NCBI GenBank assembly: GCA_951804945.1
Contig: OX638150.1
Coordinates: 11,284,001 to 11,348,000, forward strand
Source: Podarcis cretensis
Taxonomy: Eukaryota
Length of the DNA: 64,000 nucleotides
Direction: 5' to 3'
The position numbers were made by a program, and so were the translations under genes. Positions 33,120-61,229 of this stretch are shown piece by piece (within the stretch, counting starts at the first letter, position 1; every line of letters begins with the position of its first letter). The notes beneath the pieces are model-generated. The model saw nothing but the letters and a program-made list of their open reading frames with translations, made no database searches and had not been told where the DNA came from.

Positions 33120-33352
33120 TCACAATAAGGGATTTCCAGAGAAATACTGCAGGCGGTCTCTGCTTAGTTTTTTTTCTTTCATCCTTCTGTTCTGAAACCA
33201 AATTTTAACTTGTCGATCAGTGAGATTCAACATTCTGGACAGCTGCAGCCTTTTTTCTTTGTTTATGTAGACATTGAAGAAAAATTCTCTCTCTAGCTCT
33301 CTGATTTGGAATTTCGAATAGGGACATCGCTTCTTTCTTGTGCGGGGGGCAC
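33120..33352 (-). CDS. HOXC11: Homeobox protein Hox-C11, coding exon 2 (homeodomain)
   Basis: Translates to (S)[76 protein letters not shown]. Acceptor is a pyrimidine tract then cctaaag| at 33354-33353. Confidence 0.97.
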
Positions 33353-34783
33353 CTTTAGGGGGGAGGGAGGGAGAAAAATATAACCAGGAGGGAGTGAAAA
33401 TAACTAAGCAAATGACACAACAGAGCCCCAATAACCGCCCCCCCCCATCACCAAGATCTCAAATGCATAGCTTCTCTCTCACACGCACCCATCTGGAAGC
33501 ACATCCTACGGCCATGTGTAACATCCTAACAGACATGTGTACCACAACACAGCCATGAAGACAGCCTTTCCTGTTTCCAGCCCATGATCATTTTCCCCTG
33601 TTTTGGGGGGCTTTTCCAAAGGGATTCCTGAGTGCAATAATCAACAATAACTGCTGGGGGGAAGGAAGCCGGCGAAGCAGCTGGGAAGCATAGACGTTCA
33701 AACTGCAAATCTGCCGCCTTTCTTACAGAGTCAGCAGGAGCAACGTTAGAACTATGAGGGCTCAGAATTCTGCTCTGCATAAGTTTTTGATTATCGGGAA
33801 CGCCACCCTCCAAATACATTCAGCACACACATACACACAGAGAGAGAATCAAAGCAACATATCTGAGCAGTCTAAAAAAAGGGAAGCAATGTGTTTCCCA
33901 AGGCAGCAAACAGAATTGCAAACACAACGTGTGCGCGCGCCTGTGTGGGTGTGGGTGTGTAAGTTCATGCAGGACTTAGCCTTCCATTCACCTATGAATG
34001 AAAAAATAAATAAACATCCATGATGCATTTACTTGAACAGTTGCTTCGATTTAAGGTTGTTGTTGTTGCTTTAAAAATGAAAATAAACCCACTTATATAT
34101 GAATATCTAAAGGCATCTGAGTATATTAAAATATACTTAAAATGTGTGTGTGTGTGTGATAAACACATTTAATAGCAAAATAAGCATTGTCTATTTGAAA
34201 AGAAATCACCCAAAGAACTACGCCTAAGCAATGCAATTTGCAGGAAGAAAAGCAACAACAAGAGCAAGAAGAACAACACAGGATGCACTGAGGACATGAA
34301 AACGTTGCATTCCCTTTCCCCACATTCATAGCAATATAGATATATATTTGAATTTCTGCATGCATTTTCAATAAGGGAAAAAAATAACACCACCCGCCCC
34401 CCCCCGCTCGCTCGCGTGCATCTCTCAGTGCTTCCTCGCGAGGACAGGAAGCAAGAGCAGTGTTCTGCCCAATTGCCTTTTACCCTCAGAAGCCCGGGAC
34501 CAAATCCTTTTAAAATGCTCATGTAAGTTCATGATCAAAGTTAATATTTGTCACCATGGTGTGCTTTTAAAATTTCACAGACTCTGAGATACTGTGTCTG
34601 CGCCTAACATCTCCATTTTTCTCAAAGAGCCTTTCCCATCGTAAAAATTCTTCTCGTTGCAAGAAAGAGCTTTGTAGGTTATAATAAAATCCTTTGAATG
34701 CTTATAAAACTCCACATAAAATTTGACCGACAAAACAGCGGGCTAGTCCCTTAACCTTTCCATTTACTGCTTTCTCTACCTAC

Positions 34784-35462
34784 TCGAGTTGCTGGTTTTG
34801 CTCCCTTCCTTGTTGACAGAGGAGGATGAAGCTGAAGAGCCCGGGTTGGTGTTTTCTTCCTCGTCTTCCGGGTCTACGCCTTGGTCGCCGCGGGATGACA
34901 GCGCGGTGGGCTGGGAGTCGGTCTCCAGCTTGCTCTCGGTCTTCTGCAAACAGGTCTCGGGCGGGTTCTCGGTGGAGCAGTAGGCGTTTTCGAAGAACCG
35001 GTCGAAGCCTTGCGGGAGGACACTGTTTTTGTTCATGCTGGAGTAGAAGCCCGTGGACGCCGGGTGGTTGGAGCTAGGGTGGTGGTGGTGGCTGTACACG
35101 CTTTCGTTTTTCATTAGCATTTCGGTCATGGTGGAAGGCGGGAGGCAATCCCTGTGCATCAGATCTTCCGCGGAATAACACGAGGCGTAATTGCTTCTAT
35201 GGTGCCATTTATTCGAGGGGTCTAGCCCGTAGGAGACCTCTCGCACTGGCTGCACTTGAGAGAGGTTAGTGGAATAAGGGTAGGAGATTTGGCGAGAGGG
35301 GGCCTGTGGCAAAAAAGATGACACAGTTGAAAATTCTGGGACGTAATAGGTGCAGCTGGGGAGGTAGAGATTGGAAGCGCAACCTGCTCGCTCTCCAAAG
35401 TCAGCACTCCGCTCTTTGCGCGACTGGGAGCAGAAGTTTCCTAGGTTCACTGAGTTAAACAT
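34784..35462 (-). CDS. HOXC11: Homeobox protein Hox-C11, coding exon 1
   Basis: [18 protein letters not shown]...[34 protein letters not shown]...[15 protein letters not shown]. Donor A|GTAGGT at 34783. Exons of 679 + 233 nt give 303 aa; intron 1431 nt. Confidence 0.97.
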
Positions 35463-42810: not shown

Positions 42811-44206
42811 GTCTCTCCCCCGCCCTCTCTCTTTATAGATATATACACACAGAGTGACTTACTAAACTGAAATTTAAAATATCTGTTTTCTTAGTAACTT
42901 TATATTGCTTTAGTTATTGACTTCATCCTACTAGGATTCAGAACCAGCTTGTCTGAAGTGCTGTTTGATGCTTCTATTCTCTCCCTCACGCGCACATTCC
43001 ATCATTCTGCTTTCTTTATCAGACATACTCCCTTTGGGACTTCTTCAAATCTGCTATTCTGTGTCTGCATATAAATGGATATTTTTTTACAGTAAGGAGT
43101 TTAGGAACTCACATGGTCGCATTGTCCATTTCAGTAAGCTGTAGGGAGAGCAAATCCAAAATTGTGCGTCCTCTGCACGCTGGAAAAGGATGCAGATTTG
43201 TTTGGCTTTGTTCTTAAAATACCTTTAAATGCTAGCAGCGAGATACTAAATATTTTAAGCTCGGAGTTCCCGTTGACTTCAAGGATGTGCACATAAGGAT
43301 GTCTCCTCATAGTGACTCGTATAGTAGGTAACGTGGCAAGTAGGCTGCTGTTTACAACAAAAATAAAGCAACGCTAATTGATAATGTGGGACTGAAAGGA
43401 AAGGACAAGTATATTCCGTGTTGATTTTTTTTTTTTTAATACAAACAGAGGCCGTCTTTTTTGAGGTGGAGTCTTGTTTACCAATTTCCTCTGCCATGCA
43501 GGGCAAACGAATGAAAAAAAAGCTCTCCCGTGCCTTCTGCGCCACGCAGAAATCCCAAAACAAATAAACAAACAGGACTGGAAGTTCAAAACGGGGAAGA
43601 ACTGCTGATAGCGCTGCAAATGCACATCTGGCATTAGTCTGGGAAGAGCCACACAAGCGCGCGCGCGCACGCTGTATAGATTAGGCGGCTTTGGAAACTG
43701 TCACTGGGAAATCTGTTCATTTTCTCTAATGGACTAGGAGAAGGATTGTTGTTATATTCCTCGCCCATCCCACAACAACATCCTTGCTAAACAGCACGCA
43801 CGAACGCCGGGTGTCAAGACAATATAAATGATTGGGTTTGTGTTTTTTTGTTCATATGCGTTGCGGCACTGCCGCCTCAGCTAAGTAACAACTGTATGCG
43901 CTACCGCTATGGAGGAGGGCCATAGACCCAGGCGAAATTTATAGCGGCCCCGGCGTTGCGGTTATGATTTTGCTATGATATTACTTGGGAACAAAGTCCC
44001 ATTGATTCCCTTGGAAATCTACTCTCTTGCAAAGGCGTGGGGTTTTTTTGTTTGGTTTGTTGCTTTCCCTCCCTTACTCTCACCGTCCCCACCGCACTCC
44101 CACGTCGCTGCCAATACGAGAAGAAAATGGGAAGGGGGGGGTGAAGCTACTTGGATAGCCTAAAATTATGGGTTGACCTCGATGGAGATTTAATTCTCAT
44201 GCTCCC

Positions 44207-44225
44207 CTCCACCATCTTGCGGTGG
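44207..44225 (-). promoter_or_regulatory. Candidate CTCF site CCACCGCAAGATGGTGGAG between HOXC11 and HOXC12
   Basis: Matches the CTCF core consensus (CC-A/G-C-N-A-G-A-T-G-G) by eye; not scored with a PWM. Confidence 0.5.
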
Positions 44226-44963
44226 TAAGGAAGCGAACCTGCTCTTCTCCGTCTCAGCCAAAACAAGGACTCCAGCCATTTTTCATATCTTTCCTTCGAG
44301 AAGAAGACTTATCTTTCACCATAATGAGAACGGCTTTGCCACTGAGAGGGAGGGGCGCTTTCTTTTGGGGGTGGGGGGTGGGAAATAAATAAATAAATAA
44401 AGCCTCTTTATTCACCCACTAACCACCCACTTTCGCCTCTCTCTCTCTCTCTCTATTTCCTCCCTTTCCCTTCCCTTCCCCTCTCCTCCATCACCCTCCA
44501 GCCCTTATCCCAGTCGCGATATCACCTTATCGGTTCAATCTATGTAAAGACCACCCACCCACTCCCCTCTTTAACCTCCGAATCCCTGGCAGATCTCCTG
44601 TGCGCAATTAAGCCCGTTCTGGGACCTCCGACGGACAACCTGTGATATGAAAATGTCTATAATCCAGCCCTCCACAGTAGACAGGCTACTCAAGACTTTG
44701 CAGGATCTCCCCTCATTTCCGCTCTTATTAATTTCAGGCGCTCTGATCTATCCAGCCCATCCCTCCCACCTCCTCCTTTATTTAAAGATTATACGATTAA
44801 GACAAGAAAATCTAAACCCTCCTTTCCCTTCTCCCCTCCCCCCACCCATTCTCCCCCTCTCCTTACCGAGCGAACTTCATTGTTTTCTGGAGGAAACCGT
44901 AATGTTGAGACATTAAACCCTAATTGGGCTTTTCTTTATGACGTTTAATTTCCTCCATCGCAG

Positions 44964-45329
44964 ACGTGTTTGCATCTTGCTGAAAGAGGAGTTGTTTGAA
45001 GTCTGCAATCCCGGAGGGGGGGGGGGAGAGGGAGGGGAAAAAAAAAACTTTCCAAGCAGCAGTCGTCATGCGGACTTCTGGTCTCATTCCCACATAGTCT
45101 CACCCTCCATGCACCCCCCACAGCCTTCCTCTTGATCGTTGCATTCAGATAGCCCCCCCTCCCTCAAAATAAGAATGGTGATGTAAAAGAGAGGGGAAAA
45201 TGGGCCCGGGGGGGGTGTTTAAAAAGAGAGACAGAGACCCATATGTTTACTCGGGTAAGAAATGCGATGGCCATTTAGCTCTGTTGTGACAAATCCATGA
45301 AAATGGAGGACCGCCGTATACCATATAAG
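44964..45329 (+). ncRNA. HOTAIR: Putative HOTAIR-orthologous segment (exon 3-like and exon 4-like blocks), antisense to HOXC
   Basis: Syntenic position and strand. GAAGTCTGCAAT...G-tract and ATGTTTAC...AGAAATGCGATGGCC...GAAAATGGAGGACCGCCG..CCATATAAG|GT resemble human HOTAIR exon 3 and exon 4 sequence as recalled. Possible acceptor at 44963 and donor at 45330. Transcription is not shown. Confidence 0.6.
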
Positions 45330-46512
45330 GTACGTAGGATGCTAACTTGACCTTCACTTTGTAATGGCGGCCCCCGCCCACCCAGACAGACTGTTGTAAA
45401 CAAAAGTCATCCGACCAAAAAAAAAAAAAAAAAAAAAAAAAGATTAGCACCGGGCAGACAAGGTCTCGCAGAATTGCTAACACATTTGCTGGTTTTTAAG
45501 CTGCGGCAAACGAGGTACAATATTCTCTGAACTACAGTAGGGGACGGAGTGGGGGTGGGGGATGGAGGAGGAGGAGGAAGAAGAAGAAGGGGGGCGGGCC
45601 TCATCATTGAAGATCAACAAAGGTCTCCCCAGATCTTTAGTTTGCTGTATTAAAGGGTTGTTAAGAGGGAGTCTTCCAATGCCGGGCTTCGTTTAGATTA
45701 CAGCGTCCGGAGCTGTTATTGAATGTGGCCTTGAGGTAGAGGGTGGCTGGGTGGCTGGGTGGGGGTGGCCGGCGCTTCTCTTAATGAATTTATCTGTCCA
45801 GATTCTTAAAAAAAAACAGCAATTCTTCATTACGATGACGACGAGGACGGACGATTTACGAATTCACTCTAATTTTAATGCAGGAGATCATTCAAAAAAT
45901 CGCCTCTGCTTTTATTTAAATCTATAGAATGTTTTGTTTACGTCAATCTGAAATGGAAAGTGTTAAAAGAAAGCGCGAGTAGCCTTCCTTCTTTCCTTTT
46001 TAAGGAAGGCAACGAGAGTCTCCCGACTCGCCATTTCCGCAGCAGCCAAATCACAACAGTGGCAAAAAGTTTGTCAGAGTGCAGAAAATAGGTTTCGTTT
46101 TCCTTTTCGAAATGCTGTGTTTGGGCCCAGGAAAAGGCTCGGTCCGTGATTGTCAGTGCGGGGAGTTCAGCCTTGTATGGTGGTGGCGGCTGTTTGCGGG
46201 GAGGGGGGGGGGAGGGAGGAGGAATCGAGACTGTACCTGATCAAACAATATAATTTATTTAACATACCTTTTTGCTTGTCAGTTACCTAGACATAATGGA
46301 GCGCTATCGATAGACGGGTCATGGATCCCGATCCACTGCACGTATTAGGCGATCGTCTCCATTTAAGTCATTTTATTCCCCTTTAAACCAACCTAGTAAT
46401 AATGGCCACCAAGTTATTGCATCTTTCACAAACTCAGAACTTTTAAAATCAGCGCCGCATACTTCACTGATGCAAGGCCGCCAGTCGTTTATATAGATGA
46501 GTAACTAGGAAA

Positions 46513-46615
46513 GGCACGACCAAAGACCAATTAATTTCAATGAGGAAGAATTAAGCACGTGCTTAATCGACAACAAGGGGACTTTCAAGCGCTCCACTTT
46601 GACTGGATCCTGCCC
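46513..46615. mobile_element. MITE relic (family B) with an 18-bp internal palindrome
   Basis: GGCACGACCAAAG ... CTTTGACTGGATCCTGCCC termini; central ATTAAGCACGTGCTTAAT at 46550-46567. Confidence 0.55.
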
Positions 46616-48280
46616 TTTCAGGAATACAGAGGAGGCAGTAAACTATAGGTTAGGCTGTTATTGTATCACTACATTCTGACGCAGATAACTGGCATAGCAA
46701 GCAGAGCATGTTTGCTTGTTTGTATCTTTATTTGTGTGTGTGTGCGCGCGCGCGCGGAGAAACACAACATTCGAATCATAAGCATGAAAAAGGGTGAACG
46801 TGTTCAAGTCTCTGTCGGCAAACACAACCACCTATTGCCCGGTCTTGGCAGGCTAATCGTCGCCTTCATTTCAAAGCTGCCCTCTCCCTTTGATTTTAGC
46901 AGCAGCTACTGGGAGGTGTGTTTTGTGGGTGTTTAAAGCCCTTCGTTTGGTGGCCCTACGTGTACCTCTGAGACGGAGTACATGCGTTCTCCTTTGTCAT
47001 TTACATCCAGAGCTCTGGATTTGTTCCTTTGAATATTTATTCCTTTATTCCTATGGCTGCTTTGTATGGCCCCTCACTGGCCCAAAATTTGCACTACCAC
47101 GCAAATGCATGCAGAATATGTGCAAATATTTTGCCCCCACTCAGTCAGGAATTCTCGAGGGACACAAGGGATGCCGGCAGCAGGACTTTGCTGATTGTGC
47201 AACCTTTAAAGGACAATTCGGTGGAACTCCCTCTTCAACTGCAGTAAATGGCAGAGCTCTCGCAGATTTTGATGGTGAGTCTTGGAAGGCGCTATCTGTT
47301 CGTTATTAGGACTCCCTCCTACCCCACCCTATTTCATATAATAATACTAATGATTCTTTCTTTCTCAAAACCTCACACAGCCTCATAATAGATTAATAGT
47401 TCTTCATCACAATGAGATGAATTTTCACATGCCCTTTAATTATCATCTCATCTCCAGCGAACACTGGTTTTGGAGAAGGTAAAGGGGGGTATTGGATACA
47501 ACTACAAAGATGGTTCCCCCCCCCCTTGGGAAGATTAATGTTGGCTGTGATTCTTAAAAGATCTTCAGATATAGCCCAGGCTGCTTGCATAACAACAATC
47601 AACTACCACAAGGCCTTCATCACATCACTTTATTAAAGGGGGAAAGTATTTTTAGCCTGTCTGTTTCAGACCCAGCCAACCATAAACAAAGATTCTTAAA
47701 TGCAAATGCGGTCTTATTTGGGTTCCAGAAAGGCAAATGAGATTTCTAACTTTTGGGCATGCCATAAAAGGAGAGTTTTTAAAGCCACCTTCACTCTTAA
47801 TTATGGGAAAGCCCTAGCGTTTCCAAATATAGGAAAACGACTCAGTCCAAGTTAAGCGTCAACTTGCTTCTGAGTAAAACTGGATAGGATCCGGCTGCAA
47901 AATTTATCGCTTTCAAGTGGGAGAGATTTAAACACCTGCTTTGAGGCTGCAGTCATAGGCAGACACATTTACTTGGGAATAAGTAAATAGGGGTAGTATG
48001 AGGGAGCACATCTCTCTGAACTCTATAGAACTCCATAGCCCTTAACTCAAGCTAGAATGTGTGCACATTTCCTTTCAAATTAAGGTTATTGGGAGATACA
48101 CGTAGACATAACCTCATGTTGTTGTTAGTTTGTTGGTTGGTAAGTGAGTGGTTTTCTTTAATTGATTCATCAACTCTGCTGGTTAACATAATCTCGCAGA
48201 AACAAAGCCTGGCTGTAAGAAATTCTAAGCAAACTCTTATGGCTCCTGCAAGGAATACAAATGTATCCATCTTTGTATCT

Positions 48281-48470
48281 TTCCTATCCTTTTCATCTTT
48301 ATTATCACTCTTGTTAACAACACCAGCGAGGCTTGATACATATATCTCGTTTAAATGCAGTCAGCCATGAAGCCACTGCAGTTGGTTGCTACAGACATAT
48401 TAATTAATTTATTCTCTCAACAGTAAAATATTGCTGTGTCTCCTTGCTACCAACCAAGTCATATAAAAAT
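48281..48470 (+). ncRNA. HOTAIR: Putative HOTAIR terminal-exon (exon 6-like) conserved block
   Basis: TTCATCTTTATTAT..CTTGTTAACAACACCAGCGAG..TATCTC..TCAGCC..TAATTAATTTATTC..AGTAAAATATTGCTGTGTCT is collinear with the recalled human HOTAIR last-exon sequence CATCTTTATGATG..CTTGTTAACAAGACCAGAGAG..TAATTAATTGATTC..TGTAAAATATGGCGGCGTCT. Confidence 0.6.
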
Positions 48471-48859
48471 CAGGGTTTATTTTTTTACCCCCTCTGCAGT
48501 TCATTAGGCTTTACCTATAAGTTTCCATTTGAAATGATTTGCTTTAAAACTAATTACTCGTATTCTATTTCATTTCCCAATCCCGGAGTGTAAGATGGAT
48601 TCAAAGGTGGCGTGGGTGGCATATGTTGGTAAACATTGCTAATTATTCCCACTCTGTCTTGATTGTGTATTTATGAACCCACCCATATAAAAGGGGGAGA
48701 AAATACTCAGTAAAAGGTGCGCTGGCATATTGATGATAATGGCACATGTTACTTAAAAGAGTGCAGTGTCGCTAGGGACAGTGTAAGATGATAATGTATC
48801 AGCCGAGATTTTGTTTAGCAGATTTCCACTTTGAGAATAAAATATTGGACTCACTTGCA

Positions 48860-49054
48860 GCACATTCCAATACACACCGACTCAGAAGTGAGCCTCTTTG
48901 AGATTAGGCAACGTGGTGCCCTCCAGGTGTGGTGGACTGCCAAAGCCTATCAGTCCAAGGCAGCATGTCCAATGGTCAGGGATGATGGGAGTTGGAGTCC
49001 AACATCTGCAGAACACCACAGTAGACTATTCATGGTGTATATAGGACTGCAGTC
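48860..49054. mobile_element. Family A MITE apparently split by a palindromic hAT-like MITE (about 48905-49022)
   Basis: The family A left half (ACTCAGAAGTGAGCC) and right end (ATAGGACTGCAGTC) flank an element with imperfect inverted arms at 48913-48938 and 48996-49019 and a GGGATGATGGGAGTTG core. Confidence 0.55.
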
Positions 49055-49226
49055 TCAGGGTAAGGAAGAAGAGAATGAGGACCAGAATTGCACACTGGGA
49101 TGACAGCAGAAGGCCCAAGCATAGGCTAGCCCTGCCCAATGTCTACAGTGCTCCAGGTGTATTCAGAAAAGACTGTTTTGGGGCCATGGCTTCTAGGGAA
49201 TTTCAGGGACCTCTGTTTGCCTAATC

Positions 49227-49478
49227 CAGGGGTAGGCAACCTAAGGCCCAGGGGCCAGATGCGGCCCAATCGCCTTCTCAATCTGGCTTGTGGACGGTCC
49301 AGGAATCCGTGTGTTTTTACATGAGTAGAATGTGTCCTTTTATTTAAAATGCATCTATGGGTTATTTGTGGGGCATAGGAATTCATTTATTTTCCCCCTC
49401 CAAAATATAGTCTGGCCCCCCACATGGTCTGAGGGACGGTGAACAGGCCCATGGCTGAAAAAGGTTGCTGACCTCCTG
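49227..49478. mobile_element. Non-autonomous hAT (Charlie-like) DNA transposon / MITE, 252 bp
   Basis: TIRs CAGGGGTAGGCAACCT ... AGGTTGCTGACCTCCTG. Flanks GCCTAATC and GCCCTAATC approximate an 8-bp TSD with central TA. Subterminal GGCCC repeats are typical of hAT elements. Confidence 0.85.
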
Positions 49479-49794
49479 GCCCTAATCTTTGAGTAAATGC
49501 TGGCACATAGCTTCAATTGCAATCTCACTTCCAAACAAGTGGGCAGGGCAGACCACTTGCCAGGGGAGCTAGTTGATGGTTACACCTCCTGGGCTGATAC
49601 ACTTCCTTAATCCCAATGGCAAGGATTTGATCCTCTGTGTTTGCATTTGCTGAAGAGAAGGTATGCCCACATCAGCGCTGTTAAGGTATTTATTTACCCC
49701 TCCAGGGATATCTCTTCTGGTGTGGCTGAGGACTAGTATTGAAATAAAATCAGAAATGAGGGGAAAGTAGATGTTGCTTTCATTAAGCAGCATC

Positions 49795-50025
49795 TAAGAG
49801 TCCTCTCTGATGTGGTTTTAAGCTCTTCTGATGTGTTAGCCCTCTCAAATGGAAAACAATGGGTCTTAAAGTGTGTTTAACTCTGACTGGATAGGATCTA
49901 TCATTATCATGATGAAGAATCCAAGAAAAGGTAACCACTTTAAAGTCCTGTTGATTACAGTAGGGTAATCAGAGTTAAACACCTGATTAACTCAAAGAGC
50001 TTTTAATTTTGAGTAGATCGTGCCC
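49795..50025. mobile_element. One or two adjacent family B MITE relics
   Basis: Ends in GATCGTGCCC like 42645-42653. Perfect 14-bp inverted repeat at 49873-49886 and 49969-49982. Confidence 0.5.
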
Positions 50026-53316: not shown

Positions 53317-54584
53317 CGGGTTGGGGGGAGGAGAGAGGAGTTAGCAAACTACATCACCGATCTCTAACAATTGCCTTCGCGCAATCTCTTTCTTTCCTTA
53401 ATGCACCTATACCATAAGAACACAGGACCTCTTTGCAAGGAAGTGCCTTCTTCTAATAACAGGACTAAAGAAAGCGGAGAGAATAGACTGGCATAAACTC
53501 ACACCTATCCTATTCCCACTTATTAAGAGCCGAAGGCGCAAAGGATTCTACATGGGAATGAGCAGTTCTTGATCCGCTTTTTGGACATGGTCTCTCCCTC
53601 CTCCCCTTCACAATCCACTTATTGATCTTTTAAAAGGGTTTTGGCGTGCGCGCGCCTGCCGGTGTGTGTATTAATGCATTGCTCCAGCCGCCACTAAACT
53701 TTATGGTTGAACCGAAGACCTGAAAGGTGGATAAAGCCATTACATGTAAATCTTCCTTTCCAGAGGAAGATTCCACCTCTCTCTCTCTCCCTATACATAC
53801 ATACATACATACATACATGCATGCATGCATGCATACACCCCCATCCCCTACCACTCATACAACCTACACAATTCATGAAATTTAAATTGACTCTGTGGAA
53901 TCGCTGCTATAAAGGCACCTGGCTGGATATTCAGAAGAGAGAATAAAACACGACGCCAACGGGAGGAATTAAATATGGGCTTATTGAAGAAGATCGAATC
54001 CAAGGCTCGTGAGGGTTTTTGTGCTTTGTTTTGGAGGTGGGGTATTTGTTTGTTTTTGTTTATATTACAAGAGTTGCAGATTTAAATAAAAGTGTCTCTT
54101 AATTTAAAAAAAAAAAACATCCATGTTATTTTAAATAAATAAATATCTTCCCCCTTTAATCTAGGGGAACTTTGTCTTGGCCTCAGTTGCTCCTGAAAGG
54201 GGACAAAAAGAAATAGACTGGTGACACCTCTCTTTCCCAGAGAACAAAATATCAGTAATGATTGGGTTTATAAGCAAGGCCATCAGGAGACCCCCCCCCA
54301 AAAAAAACCCTTATATTCGCATTAAACATTAACATCCCAGATTCATTTACTCTCTTATCTTCTTGGATTTTTTTTTAATTATAGGTATCATTGTGCTCCG
54401 AGGCACCCCTTACTTTACAACCTATTTTATATATCCACCTAATTATTTTTTTTAAGGGAAACATGATCTATATACCTCCAAATGTTTCATTGGCTTATTT
54501 CTGTGCGCGCGCGCTACTCTTTTACTAAGCTCTCTCGGTCCTCCAACAGTCGATAGTAAATCACCAACCAGAGGTTTGAAACAT

Positions 54585-56928: not shown

Positions 56929-57059
56929 NNNNNNNNNNNNNNNNNNNNNNNNNNNNNNNNNNNNNNNNNNNNNNNNNNNNNNNNNNNNNNNNNNNNNNNN
57001 NNNNNNNNNNNNNNNNNNNNNNNNNNNNNNNNNNNNNNNNNNNNNNNNNNNNNNNNNNN
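56929..57059. other. Assembly gap (131 N)
   Basis: Run of n characters. Confidence 1.
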
Positions 57060-58754: not shown

Positions 58755-58993
58755 TTAAAAGAAGGAAAGGGCTTGCTCTCTCAGGAGGAGTCTTTTCTTT
58801 TTCATACGCCGGTTCTGGAACCAGATCTTCACCTGCTGGTCACTCAGGTTTAACCGATCTGAAAGCTCCCTCCTTCTTTGGCGAGTAATGAATTCATTGA
58901 CCATAAACTCCCCTTCCAGCTCCGCTAGCTGTAGTTTAGAATAGGGTTTTCGCTTTTTCCGGGACCTTGTGTGCATCGGGTACCAGGGAGCAC
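58755..58993 (-). CDS. HOXC12: Homeobox protein Hox-C12, coding exon 2 (homeodomain)
   Basis: Translates to (G)[78 protein letters not shown]. Acceptor ttcttag| at 58995-58994. Confidence 0.97.
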
Positions 58994-59351
58994 CTAAGAA
59001 CAGCGTGATGGAAAGGAGATTTAAACACACGGAGGGGAAGAGAGATAGAGAAAGAAAGAAACGAAAAGAAAAAGGGGAGCGGGTAACGCTTTAAAAAAGG
59101 GAATGCTTCCCCCCTCCCTTTTTGACCCACACACCGCTCCTTATTTAATAATATGAGATACACGTTTCTAATGCGCAATCCAGTAAAGATGCTTTAACTT
59201 CGAAAGAAAGGAGGATGGGTGGGAAGAAGACCTTTACATCTTCGTTTTAGATTCCAAGCTCCTGGGCTCCTGTGTACCACATAAGTCATACATTGCAGGT
59301 TTTCGGAACTATTAAGATTTAAGGAGAGACCTTAAAAAGAACTAGTTAGGG

Positions 59352-59403
<52 letters not shown>

Positions 59404-60347
59404 GCTGGACTTTTATAACCGATGGCAACTTTTGCTTATTTATCTTACAAAAAAATAAGCAACCTAAGCTAGCTCTTGCAGATCCCGAACAGCCAAAAAG
59501 TACCAGCACCACCAGCTAGAATGAATGCTAGAGTGTCTCTGTGGTTACCGTGTAAGACCTCAAGGCACCAGATGGGCTGGCATGCCTTAGGTGTCCGGTT
59601 TAGGAGATGTCAGATCTGAAGTTTAAGGACGAGGAAGCCTCTGTCTTCAGAGTCCCAAAGCCAGATTCTGCAGAGGGAATGAAACATCTCCAGCAGCCAG
59701 GGACGCTTCACAGGAGACGAGAACCAACTGGTCCTTGTTCCTGGAAGTGTTTGCTCACCAGAGGATCAGGCACATAACGGGAAGCTTTATGAGAGAGAGT
59801 TTGTTTGGGTTGGGGTTGGTTTTTTTTTTTTTTGTATTTTGGCAAATGGTGTCTCAGCATTGCGTGGATATATATACTTTTCTTTATAGAACCTTCCCGG
59901 TTTTGTATGGGGATGGGCTGGGATGGCGGGAAGGCGAGAATTGGGTTTTGAAAACCAGGGTGTTTGTTTCCCTTTTTTTAATGCAGAGCTTGGCACCATC
60001 CTTAAAATGGGTTTTTACCCAGGGTGGCTAATCTCACCGGGGACAGAAAACCCGTGGAAGTTTAGCCCTGCAGTCAGACTTCTACCAAATCTTCCAAATA
60101 CAATCACACACCCTTCTACATTTCATTTCTGTTGCAAAAGCTTCACGCACCCAGTGGGAAATTGTCCTGCATGTAGCGTGCCTGTTCGGATTCGGGAGGA
60201 GGGTGGAGAGAGAGAGAGAGAGAGAGAAAGAAAGAGGCATGGAAATCTGTCTATCTGGGCCATCGCGATCTCTTTTATGGGATATTTACATGTTTATAGG
60301 CTTTTCTTTTAAAAGAAGCAGCACCTAATAAAGCACGAGGCATTTGA

Positions 60348-60366
60348 GTGCTACCCCTAGTGGCCT
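60348..60366 (-). promoter_or_regulatory. Candidate CTCF site AGGCCACTAGGGGTAGCAC in the HOXC12 intron
   Basis: GGCCACTAGGGG core match by eye; not scored with a PWM. Confidence 0.5.
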
Positions 60367-60588
60367 CGGCACAAATAGACATGCTTCAGTCCCAGCTGCT
60401 AATTTCATGGAATTTATAACAGCAAGAGTCGCGAGCAGACTTTTTCAAGCGAGAGAGCGCGCGCGCGTAAGAGAGAGAAATAGAGAGAGAGAACACAAAA
60501 TAAGAATAAAATAAAGAAGAGGCATTGCATAAATTCGCTTTTCTTATTCGTATATATATATATATATTTCCTGGTCGCACGTTCTTAC

Positions 60589-61153
60589 CCCCAGCGGAAA
60601 GATTGCTTCCTTGGTTGATAGGGGAAACCATTGTGGACGGCTCGCTGGTGGCGCCCTTATTGCCTTCATTGAGTAAGGAGGAGCTGGAGTCTGACTCCAA
60701 AGACTGACAAGAGGGGGGATCGTGGGGCACCGCCTCGGGAGCCGGATAGTCAAATTTGCCGAAACTGCCGCTCATTCCATTGGGGATCCCCGATTCGAGA
60801 GGCATCAAGGCATTGTCCCTAACCCTCTCTTCCCTTTTGAGGGGAGCGTTCTCGGAGCACGCCTCCCTATAGTAGCACTTGCTCTCTTCCACTCTAGCTA
60901 GGTCGCAGGCTCGGCTGAAGGAAGGGTTAATAGACACGGGGCTGCTGAGATAGGGCTGGGGGTATCCGTTGCAGGGTTCTGAGGATGCCCAGGGCAGAGA
61001 ACAGACATTGTCCCTTCTTGGGTAGGAGAGAGACGGCAAGCCGGGCAGCTGTCCTCCGGAGGCTCGGAAATTGGGGAAATAGAAGGTGTCTCCCGTATGG
61101 ATGTTCACCAACGGTCCCACAAACCCAGGATTAAGGAGATTATGTTCGCCCAT
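60589..61153 (-). CDS. HOXC12: Homeobox protein Hox-C12, coding exon 1
   Basis: [53 protein letters not shown]...[23 protein letters not shown]. The true ATG is at 61153; the ORF track starts earlier at a TTG. Donor G|GTAAGA at 60588. Exons of 565 + 239 nt give 267 aa; intron 1595 nt. Confidence 0.97.
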
Positions 61154-61229
61154 TTCCGCGGGCCTGACCAAGAGCTTCTAGTTTATTGCTATCTGACATT
61201 AAACATAGTTAAACCTAAAGGTCCACCCT

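What the first reader, a model, noticed from the sequence alone, without database searches (positions are those of the whole stretch)
45236..45335. HOTAIR exon 4-like block with an intact splice donor in a non-mammalian (probably squamate) HoxC cluster
Seen: on the + strand, antisense to the Hox genes and between HOXC11 and HOXC12, the sequence reads ATGTTTAC..AGAAATGCGATGGCC..GAAAATGGAGGACCGCCGTATACCATATAAG|GTACGT. Recalled, not aligned: human HOTAIR exon 4 ends ATGTTTAC..AGAAATGCCACGGCC..GAAATGGAGGACCGGCGCCTTCCTTATAAG before an intron. HOTAIR is usually described as poorly conserved and largely mammalian. Inference: this exon end and its donor may predate the mammal-reptile split, so a spliced reptilian HOTAIR ortholog may exist.
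Basis: partly seen in the sequence, partly recalled or inferred. Interest (0 to 1): 0.85.

Follow-up and report, generated by a model that had tools for sequence, protein, structure and literature searches.

The report
Lizard HOTAIR exon-4 and CNE block
Between HOXC11 and HOXC12, a lacertid lizard carries a clear copy of the best-conserved piece of the mammalian HOTAIR gene: the end of exon 4, its splice donor and the adjoining ancient 32-letter element. This is real, but published work showing the module in most jawed vertebrates largely predicts it, and I could not test whether the lizard splices it into an RNA.

Summary
Rfam's HOTAIR_3 model (mammalian exon 4 region) matches 45226-45328 over its full length (33.1 bits, E 8e-4, below gathering). 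HOTAIR_2 (48283-48348, E 1.4e-8) and HOTAIR_1 (48393-48430) are collinear with it, all in the HOXC11-HOXC12 interval.

The published 32-nt HOTAIR conserved noncoding element (CNE; Nepal et al. 2020) starts 12 nt after the donor, at 45342. It matches the published HOTAIR-sense oligo at 39 of 40 letters on the + strand. This fixes the sense strand as antisense to the Hox genes. It also implies that the Rfam models are reverse-complemented.

HOXC10 exon 1 is 98% identical to Lacerta agilis, so the genome is from a lacertid and "squamate" is right.

The novelty is overstated. Nepal et al. (2018 preprint, 2020) already reported about 175 nt around this CNE, including the flanking "HOTAIR exons", as conserved across non-teleost jawed vertebrates. 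They also proposed an ancestral HOTAIR. Squamates were not in their species list.

The donor AAG|GTACGT is strong, but it overlaps a perfect CArG box, so constraint at the DNA (enhancer) level is a live rival.

RNA evidence could not be obtained.

The parts
45226..45329 (+). HOTAIR exon 4-like block (the 3' part of a putative exon). Conserved sub-blocks lie at about 45243-45250, 45258-45272 and 45299-45329.
   Evidence: Rfam RF01906 HOTAIR_3 matches over its full length at 45226-45328, reported on the - strand, 33.1 bits, E 8.3e-4. Sequence read. Single copy in the window.
45330..45335 (+). Candidate 5' splice site AAG|GTACGT. It lies 12 nt upstream of the CNE.
   Evidence: 9.2 bits on a rough donor matrix; 12 sites this good on the + strand of 64 kb. 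The Rfam alignment ends 1 nt before the GT.
45334..45339 (+). Second, weak GT (TAC|GTAGGA), exactly 8 nt upstream of the CNE. That is the spacing reported for human and mouse.
   Evidence: 2.5 bits; spacing; the 8-nt spacing is stated in Nepal et al..
45321..45330 (.). Perfect CArG box CCATATAAGG spanning the exon/intron junction.
   Evidence: One of only 5 matches to CC[AT]6GG in the 64-kb window. The reverse-complemented mammalian Rfam consensus ends CCUUAUAA, which fits a CArG box if followed by G|G.
45342..45374 (+). Lizard copy of the published 32-nt HOTAIR CNE (33 nt here: one C-to-A change and one extra G).
   Evidence: The HOTAIR-sense 40-nt oligo of Nepal Table S4 matches 45340-45380 at 39 of 40 letters. 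The 32-mer of Table S1 is located at 45342.
48283..48348 (+). HOTAIR exon 6-like conserved block (Rfam HOTAIR_2).
   Evidence: 47.5 bits, E 1.4e-8, model 1-69, reported on the - strand.
48393..48430 (+). HOTAIR exon 6-like conserved block (Rfam HOTAIR_1). Weak on its own.
   Evidence: 22.9 bits, E 2.1, but full model 1-37, same strand, collinear, and 45 nt from the HOTAIR_2 hit.
45149..45149 (+). Nearest plausible 3' splice acceptor upstream of the block (ttgcattcag|A). Others are at 45124 and 45098. A mouse-like transcription start in this area is equally possible.
   Evidence: Pyrimidine-tract and YAG scan. Speculative.
34776..35462 (-). HOXC11 exon 1 (flanking anchor; the block lies 9.8 kb upstream of its ATG).
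   Evidence: ORF and homologs.
58755..59030 (-). HOXC12 homeobox exon (flanking anchor).
   Evidence: ORF with homeodomain sequence.

Best explanation
Positions 45226-45380 are the lacertid ortholog of the conserved core of the HOTAIR locus. The core comprises the 3' part of mammalian exon 4, its 5' splice site, and the ancient 32-nt CNE that begins a few nucleotides into the intron. That homology is shown. The inferred mechanism is as follows. The + strand is transcribed antisense to HOXC11 and HOXC12. The block then serves as the end of an exon that splices from 45329|45330 to a downstream exon carrying the exon 6-like blocks at 48283-48430. This would be a mouse-like [exon 4]-[exon 6] architecture. 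The abutting CNE would act as an enhancer and is sometimes retained in the RNA, as described in mammals.
For: - Position and orientation between HOXC11 and HOXC12.
- Full-length, significant match to Rfam HOTAIR_3, with collinear HOTAIR_2 and HOTAIR_1 hits.
- The published HOTAIR-sense CNE oligo matches the + strand at 39/40 letters, starting 10 nt after the GT.
- The same CNE lies 8 nt from the exon 4-type splice site in human and mouse.
- The donor AAG|GTACGT is among the 12 strongest on the + strand of the window, and it persists despite a 4-nt spacing change right next to it.
- In mouse, the first Hotair exon ends in the exon 4 homolog and splices to the exon 6 homolog.
- Exon 4 is the best-conserved short exon in mammals.
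- A HoxC host transcript is recorded for coelacanth.
- Taxon: HOXC10 exon 1 is 98% identical to Lacerta agilis.
Against:
- The last exon base and the first intron base are also the GG of a perfect CArG box. In mammals the CNE region carries enhancer marks, a DNase-hypersensitive site (DHS) and bidirectional CAGE tags. DNA-level constraint could therefore explain the conservation without any splicing.
- Looking only for HOTAIR exon families biases the search toward finding 'exonic' blocks, and the interval holds many other conserved elements.
- Strong-looking donors occur by chance; one lies inside the block at 45255.
- No hits to HOTAIR_4 or HOTAIR_5.
- Rfam scores are below gathering.
- No significant RNA fold on either strand.
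Confidence: 0.55

Rival explanations
1. DNA element only. The block is the conserved flank of the HoxC11-C12 CNE enhancer. The CArG box (a possible SRF site) and neighbouring motifs are what selection preserves. The exon and donor use known in mammals is either a later exaptation or irrelevant in lizards. Any lizard transcription here would be unspliced, bidirectional enhancer RNA.
For: - Perfect CArG box at 45321-45330, one of 5 in 64 kb, with W-to-W change only relative to the mammalian consensus.
- A paralogous CNE exists in HoxD, where it has a different transcript context.
- Conservation is patchy, in 7-13 nt islands separated by indels, as in clusters of binding sites.
- No RNA-structure signal.
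Against: - A CArG box needs only the GG. The lizard also keeps T at +2, G at +5 and T at +6, giving a near-consensus donor.
- The exon 6-like blocks 3 kb downstream are conserved collinearly.
- Human, mouse and marsupial all use this exon, and coelacanth has a host transcript.
Confidence: 0.4
2. The conserved block belongs to a Hox-sense (- strand) transcript. By analogy with the HoxD paralog, where the CNE lies about 55 nt downstream of the start of a noncoding HOXD11 transcript, the block would be the promoter-proximal part of a distal HOXC11 transcript.
For: - The paralogous HoxD CNE is embedded in a sense noncoding HOXD11 transcript just downstream of its start site.
- The two CNEs have the same orientation relative to the Hox genes. 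This follows from their RNA complementarity.
- Bidirectional CAGE tags are seen at the human CNE.
Against: - No such HOXC sense transcript is described in the papers read.
- The flanks of the HoxC and HoxD CNEs share little homology.
- The strong splice signal is on the + strand, not the - strand.
Confidence: 0.04
3. Chance resemblance, with no homology to HOTAIR.
For: Rfam scores are below the gathering cut-offs.
Against: E 8e-4 and E 1.4e-8 for two families, plus a third collinear hit, all in the expected interval, order and strand. The published CNE lies directly beside the block at 39/40 identity.
Confidence: 0.01

Closest known systems
Mammalian HOTAIR exon 4 (Rfam RF01906, 'HOTAIR conserved region 3')
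   Same: Same interval (HOXC11-HOXC12) and same orientation relative to the Hox genes. The model aligns end to end, and a GT follows the aligned exon end directly. Three conserved islands are shared.
   Different: Only about 65% identity to the mammalian consensus, with 5 inserted bases. The score of 33 bits is far below the gathering score of 80. Expression and splicing are unknown in the lizard.
HOTAIR CNE of Nepal et al. 2020 (32 nt, HoxC11-C12, with a paralog in HoxD11-D12) and its ~175-nt conserved flank
   Same: The CNE is present at 45342-45374 with one substitution and one inserted G. It carries the 'A' at CNE position 22 where the human 32-mer has C, which may be the non-mammalian state the paper describes. 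It sits immediately downstream of the exon 4-type splice site. The conserved stretch here, about 155 nt (45226-45380), is close to the ~175 nt reported.
   Different: No squamate is among their 37 listed species. The distance from the donor to the CNE is 12 nt here, against 8 nt in human and mouse. A second, weak GT sits at the 8-nt position. The HoxD paralog could not be examined because it is not in the window.
Mouse Hotair (two exons: first exon ending in the exon 4 homolog, second exon homologous to human exon 6)
   Same: The lizard has homologs of exactly those two parts, and no detectable homolog of the regions modelled by HOTAIR_4 and HOTAIR_5.
   Different: The mouse transcript is shown by RNA-seq and in situ hybridisation. 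The lizard architecture is only inferred from DNA.
CArG-box (SRF-type) enhancer elements
   Same: Perfect CC(A/T)6GG at 45321-45330. The motif class appears to be kept in the mammalian consensus.
   Different: No binding or chromatin data for the lizard. The motif overlaps a splice donor, so the two constraints cannot be separated from sequence alone.

Membership tests
HOTAIR lncRNA gene | Located between HOXC11 and HOXC12 | tested here: met
   HOXC11 at 33120-35462 and HOXC12 at 58755-61171, both on the - strand. The block is at 45226-45329.
HOTAIR lncRNA gene | Sense strand is antisense to the HOXC genes | tested here: met
   Met at the DNA level only. The published HOTAIR-sense CNE oligo matches the + strand and the Hox genes are on the - strand. 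Transcription itself was not tested.
HOTAIR lncRNA gene | Sequence match to the exon 4 region at Rfam's curated gathering score (RF01906, 80 bits) | tested here: not met
   33.1 bits. The match is nevertheless significant (E 8.3e-4) and covers the full model.
HOTAIR lncRNA gene | Collinear match to the conserved exon 6 domain (RF01905 at 60 bits, RF01904 at 44 bits) | tested here: not met
   47.5 bits (E 1.4e-8) and 22.9 bits (E 2.1). Both are below gathering, but collinear and on the same strand.
HOTAIR lncRNA gene | 5' regions modelled by HOTAIR_4 and HOTAIR_5 | tested here: not met
   No hit at E up to 10 in 35400-58800. The first three human exons are likewise not found in mouse or tammar.
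HOTAIR lncRNA gene | A transcribed, spliced, polyadenylated RNA using the exon 4 donor | not testable with these tools
HOTAIR lncRNA gene | PRC2/LSD1 binding and regulation of HOXD or HOXC genes | not testable with these tools
   Needs experiments.
HOTAIR CNE (Nepal et al. 2020) | 32-nt element between HoxC11 and HoxC12, antisense orientation, with few mismatches | tested here: met
   Located at 45342-45374 with one substitution and one 1-nt insertion. Unique in the window.
HOTAIR CNE (Nepal et al. 2020) | Lies 8 nt from the splice site | tested here: inconclusive
   12 nt from the strong GT at 45330 and 8 nt from the weak GT at 45334. Which GT is used is unknown.
HOTAIR CNE (Nepal et al. 2020) | Complementary paralog between HoxD11 and HoxD12 | not testable with these tools
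   The HoxD cluster is not in the window, and no note on it exists in the scan.
CArG box / SRF site | CC(A/T)6GG motif | tested here: met
   45321-45330; 5 such motifs in 64 kb.
CArG box / SRF site | SRF occupancy or enhancer activity | not testable with these tools
   Needs ChIP, ATAC or reporter assays in lizard tissue.

The most novel reading that the evidence does not exclude
Lacertid lizards express a spliced, Hox-antisense lncRNA whose exon ends at 45329 and joins an exon carrying the 48283-48430 blocks. On this reading, HOTAIR as a processed RNA with the mouse-like exon 4-exon 6 core, and not merely its CNE, dates back at least to the amniote ancestor. [quoted passage not shown]
Probability: 0.5. 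Interest if true: 0.45.

Novelty: new member of a known kind. Interest (0 to 1): 0.3.

Why it matters
HOTAIR is still widely cited as a poorly conserved, mammal-only lncRNA (He et al. 2011). The lizard locus adds a squamate to the bracket of turtle, alligator, frog, coelacanth, gar and shark already published for the CNE. It also shows that the exon 4 end and a consensus donor are kept alongside the CNE.

Lacertids therefore offer a practical non-mammalian system for a long-running question: is the conserved core of HOTAIR constrained as RNA (exon and splice site) or as DNA (CArG/CNE enhancer acting on HOXC11)? The overlap of donor and CArG box allows separating mutations. A change at +2T hits only the donor, and a change in the CC hits only the CArG box.

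The gain is incremental, because an ancestral vertebrate HOTAIR has already been proposed in print.

Tried and rejected
After I therefore sent no letters of 44001-50000 to any search tool, whether Rfam, DNA pattern, collection, paper or findings search. I worked on that stretch only by local reading, folding and scripts on the window file. One search used a 16-letter word from Nepal's Table S1, identical to the window's own letters, to locate the CNE inside the local file only.

2. Orthologous loci. No other tool holds vertebrate genomes, so no cross-species alignment was made.

3. Taxon. My first reading, 'gecko', from HOXC11 exon 1, was wrong. That exon is too conserved: turtles and Gekko are both at 94% and birds at 90%. 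HOXC10 exon 1 gave Lacerta agilis at 98%.

4. Rfam HOTAIR_4 and HOTAIR_5 gave no hits.

5. RNA folding of 45226-45385 gave z-scores of -1.3 (+ strand) and -0.7 (- strand), neither significant.

6. The search of earlier findings by words found nothing.

7. Literature searches for HOTAIR with gecko, squamates or reptiles found no report in squamates. The 'gecko' hits are the GeCKO CRISPR library.

8. Hox exons were searched singly, by reference.

9. The N run at 56929-57059 was left alone.

Full report
**Observation.**
- ATGTTTAC at 45243-45250
- AGAAATGCGATGGCC at 45258-45272
- the run from GAAAATGGAGG to CCATATAAG at 45299-45329
- GTACGT at 45330-45335

The window is a HoxC cluster with every gene on the - strand:
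- HOXC9 at 2051-2416 and 4091-4774
- mir-196 at 14199-14272 (87 bits)
- HOXC10 exon 1 at 20315-21220
- HOXC11 at 33120-33431 and 34776-35462
- HOXC12 at 58755-59030 and 60386-61171

The block therefore lies in the HOXC11-HOXC12 interval on the antisense strand, 9.8 kb upstream of the HOXC11 start codon.

**Is it more than chance?** At gathering thresholds Rfam reports only mir-196. A permissive scan of 35400-58800 gave three hits:
- HOTAIR_3 at 45226-45328: full model 1-98, 33.1 bits, E 8.3e-4
- HOTAIR_2 at 48283-48348: full model, 47.5 bits, E 1.4e-8
- HOTAIR_1 at 48393-48430: full model, 22.9 bits, E 2.1

These are three families of one gene, on one strand, in the order 3-2-1 and in the expected interval. 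That is not a chance pattern, although each score is below its curated cut-off. About 64 of the 98 HOTAIR_3 positions are identical. They fall in three islands, and the 28 nt next to the donor are about 82% identical. The block is single-copy in the window.

**Strand.** The Rfam hits are reported on the - strand, which is the Hox-sense strand. This looked contradictory until I read Nepal et al. 2020 (PMC7139118). Their Table S4 prints a 40-nt RNA oligo in HOTAIR transcript orientation around their 32-nt conserved noncoding element, or CNE. That oligo matches the window's + strand at 45340-45380 in 39 of 40 letters, with one extra G. HOTAIR sense is therefore the + strand, the arrangement is the same as in mammals, and the structure-less Rfam HOTAIR models must be reverse complements of the RNA. 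This last point is an inference from the adjacency. I could not inspect the Rfam seeds.

**What it is.** Table S1 of the same paper gives the 32-mer and its hg19 position. The figure legends say the CNE lies eight nucleotides from a splice site, in an intron of the Ensembl models, and that the same holds in mouse.

In the window the CNE starts at 45342, which is 12 nt after the GT at 45330 and 8 nt after a second GT at 45334.

The 2018 preprint is explicit:
- The flanks are called 'corresponding HOTAIR exons'.
- A HOTAIR host transcript is listed for coelacanth.

Quinn et al. (10.1101/026013) searched 43 vertebrates. They found one deeply conserved element and a splice site they scored as conserved only in eutherians and metatherians.

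Within mammals, exon 4 is the best-conserved short exon (He 2011; Yu 2012). The mouse transcript is essentially [exon 4 homolog]-[exon 6 homolog] (Schorderet and Duboule 2011). The lizard has homologs of exactly those two parts and none of the regions modelled by HOTAIR_4 and HOTAIR_5.

**Taxon.** HOXC11 exon 1 first suggested a gecko. However, the 90% clusters mix geckos, turtles and birds, and direct comparison gives 94% for turtles and Gekko alike. HOXC10 exon 1 is decisive:
- 98% to Lacerta agilis
- 83-86% for the next hits
- 81% Varanus and 80% Phrynosoma
- 76-78% crocodilians

The window comes from a lacertid lizard, so 'probably squamate' is correct. No squamate is in Nepal's list of 37 species. 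Searches for HOTAIR with squamates, reptiles or gecko found no report. The squamate instance appears to be undescribed, but it is expected by phylogenetic bracketing.

**Donor versus DNA element.** On a rough matrix typed from my own knowledge of vertebrate 5' splice sites, AAG|GTACGT scores 9.2 bits. Only 12 + strand sites in 64 kb do as well. It matches or beats the HOXC9 (7.4) and HOXC12 (7.6) exon-1 donors. The Rfam alignment runs without a gap to one base before the GT. By the exon-side alignment this GT is therefore the positional ortholog, and the 4-nt spacing difference lies in the first intron bases.

Three points weigh against reading too much into this:
- A decoy donor of 8.7 bits sits inside the block at 45255.
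- CCATATAAGG at 45321-45330 is a perfect CArG box, one of five in the window. Its terminal GG is the last exon base plus the first intron base.
- In mammals the conserved flank coincides with a DNase-hypersensitive site and bidirectional CAGE tags.

A CArG box does not need T at +2, G at +5 or T at +6, all of which the lizard keeps. That favours real donor constraint, but only mildly. RNA folding of 45226-45385 is unremarkable on both strands.

**What could not be done.** The N run at 56929-57059 was left untouched.

**Verdict.**
- The claim of surprise is not supported. The module's antiquity and the idea of an ancestral HOTAIR are already published.
- Whether the lizard makes a spliced RNA from this donor remains open. 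I put it at about 0.55, against 0.40 for a DNA-only enhancer flank.
- Novelty: a new (squamate) member of a known kind. Interest: modest.

Noticed in passing
window 45226-45328, 48283-48348, 48393-48430: All three Rfam HOTAIR families hit the Hox-sense strand, yet the published HOTAIR-sense oligo matches the opposite strand 12 nt away. The Rfam HOTAIR_1 to HOTAIR_3 models (which have no structure) therefore appear to be reverse complements of the RNA, numbered along the human + strand. Anyone annotating strand from these families would get it wrong.
   Followed up: partly
window 45311-45317 and 45364-45370: In the + strand fold, the exon end (CCGCCGU) pairs with the 3' part of the CNE (AUGGCGG), enclosing the donor in a hairpin. 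The CNE's extra G relative to the human oligo lies in this helix. The overall fold z-score is not significant, and with one lizard sequence no covariation test is possible.
   Followed up: partly
window 45330-45341: Tandem GTs 4 nt apart (GTAC GTAGGATG). The strong one is 12 nt from the CNE and the weak one 8 nt, which is the spacing reported for human and mouse. A 4-nt indel sits exactly at the exon/intron junction.
   Followed up: partly
window 45255: A decoy donor-like site, cgg|GTAAGA (8.7 bits), lies inside the conserved block. The mammalian consensus differs at this position.
   Followed up: no
window 45418-45441: A run of 24 A's about 45 nt downstream of the CNE. It could cause internal oligo-dT priming artefacts in poly(A) RNA-seq of this locus.
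   Followed up: no
window 43250-44250, 45500-46750 versus 47000-50000: CpG observed/expected is 0.8-0.97 in two patches flanking the block, but only 0.05-0.37 from 47 to 50 kb. The patch at 43.5-44.2 kb, with a donor-like site at 44225, could be an upstream promoter or first exon.
   Followed up: no
window 14199-14272 (-): mir-196 precursor (87 bits, above gathering) between HOXC9 and HOXC10, as expected for mir-196a-2.
   Followed up: yes
window 34776-35462 (-), proteins P0001, P0002, P0142: HOXC11 exon 1 is so conserved among sauropsids that 90% clusters mix gecko, turtles and birds. The ORF also reads 228 aa into the intron with the same length in unnamed Logan products (97.8% for P0142). 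This exon misleads taxon calls.
   Followed up: yes
window 53790-53838: A (TGTA/TGCA)n microsatellite produces spurious sub-threshold hits to mir-3149, mir-297 and mir-1277.
   Followed up: no
window 56929-57059: A run of 131 N (assembly gap or masked) in the HOXC11-HOXC12 interval.
   Followed up: no
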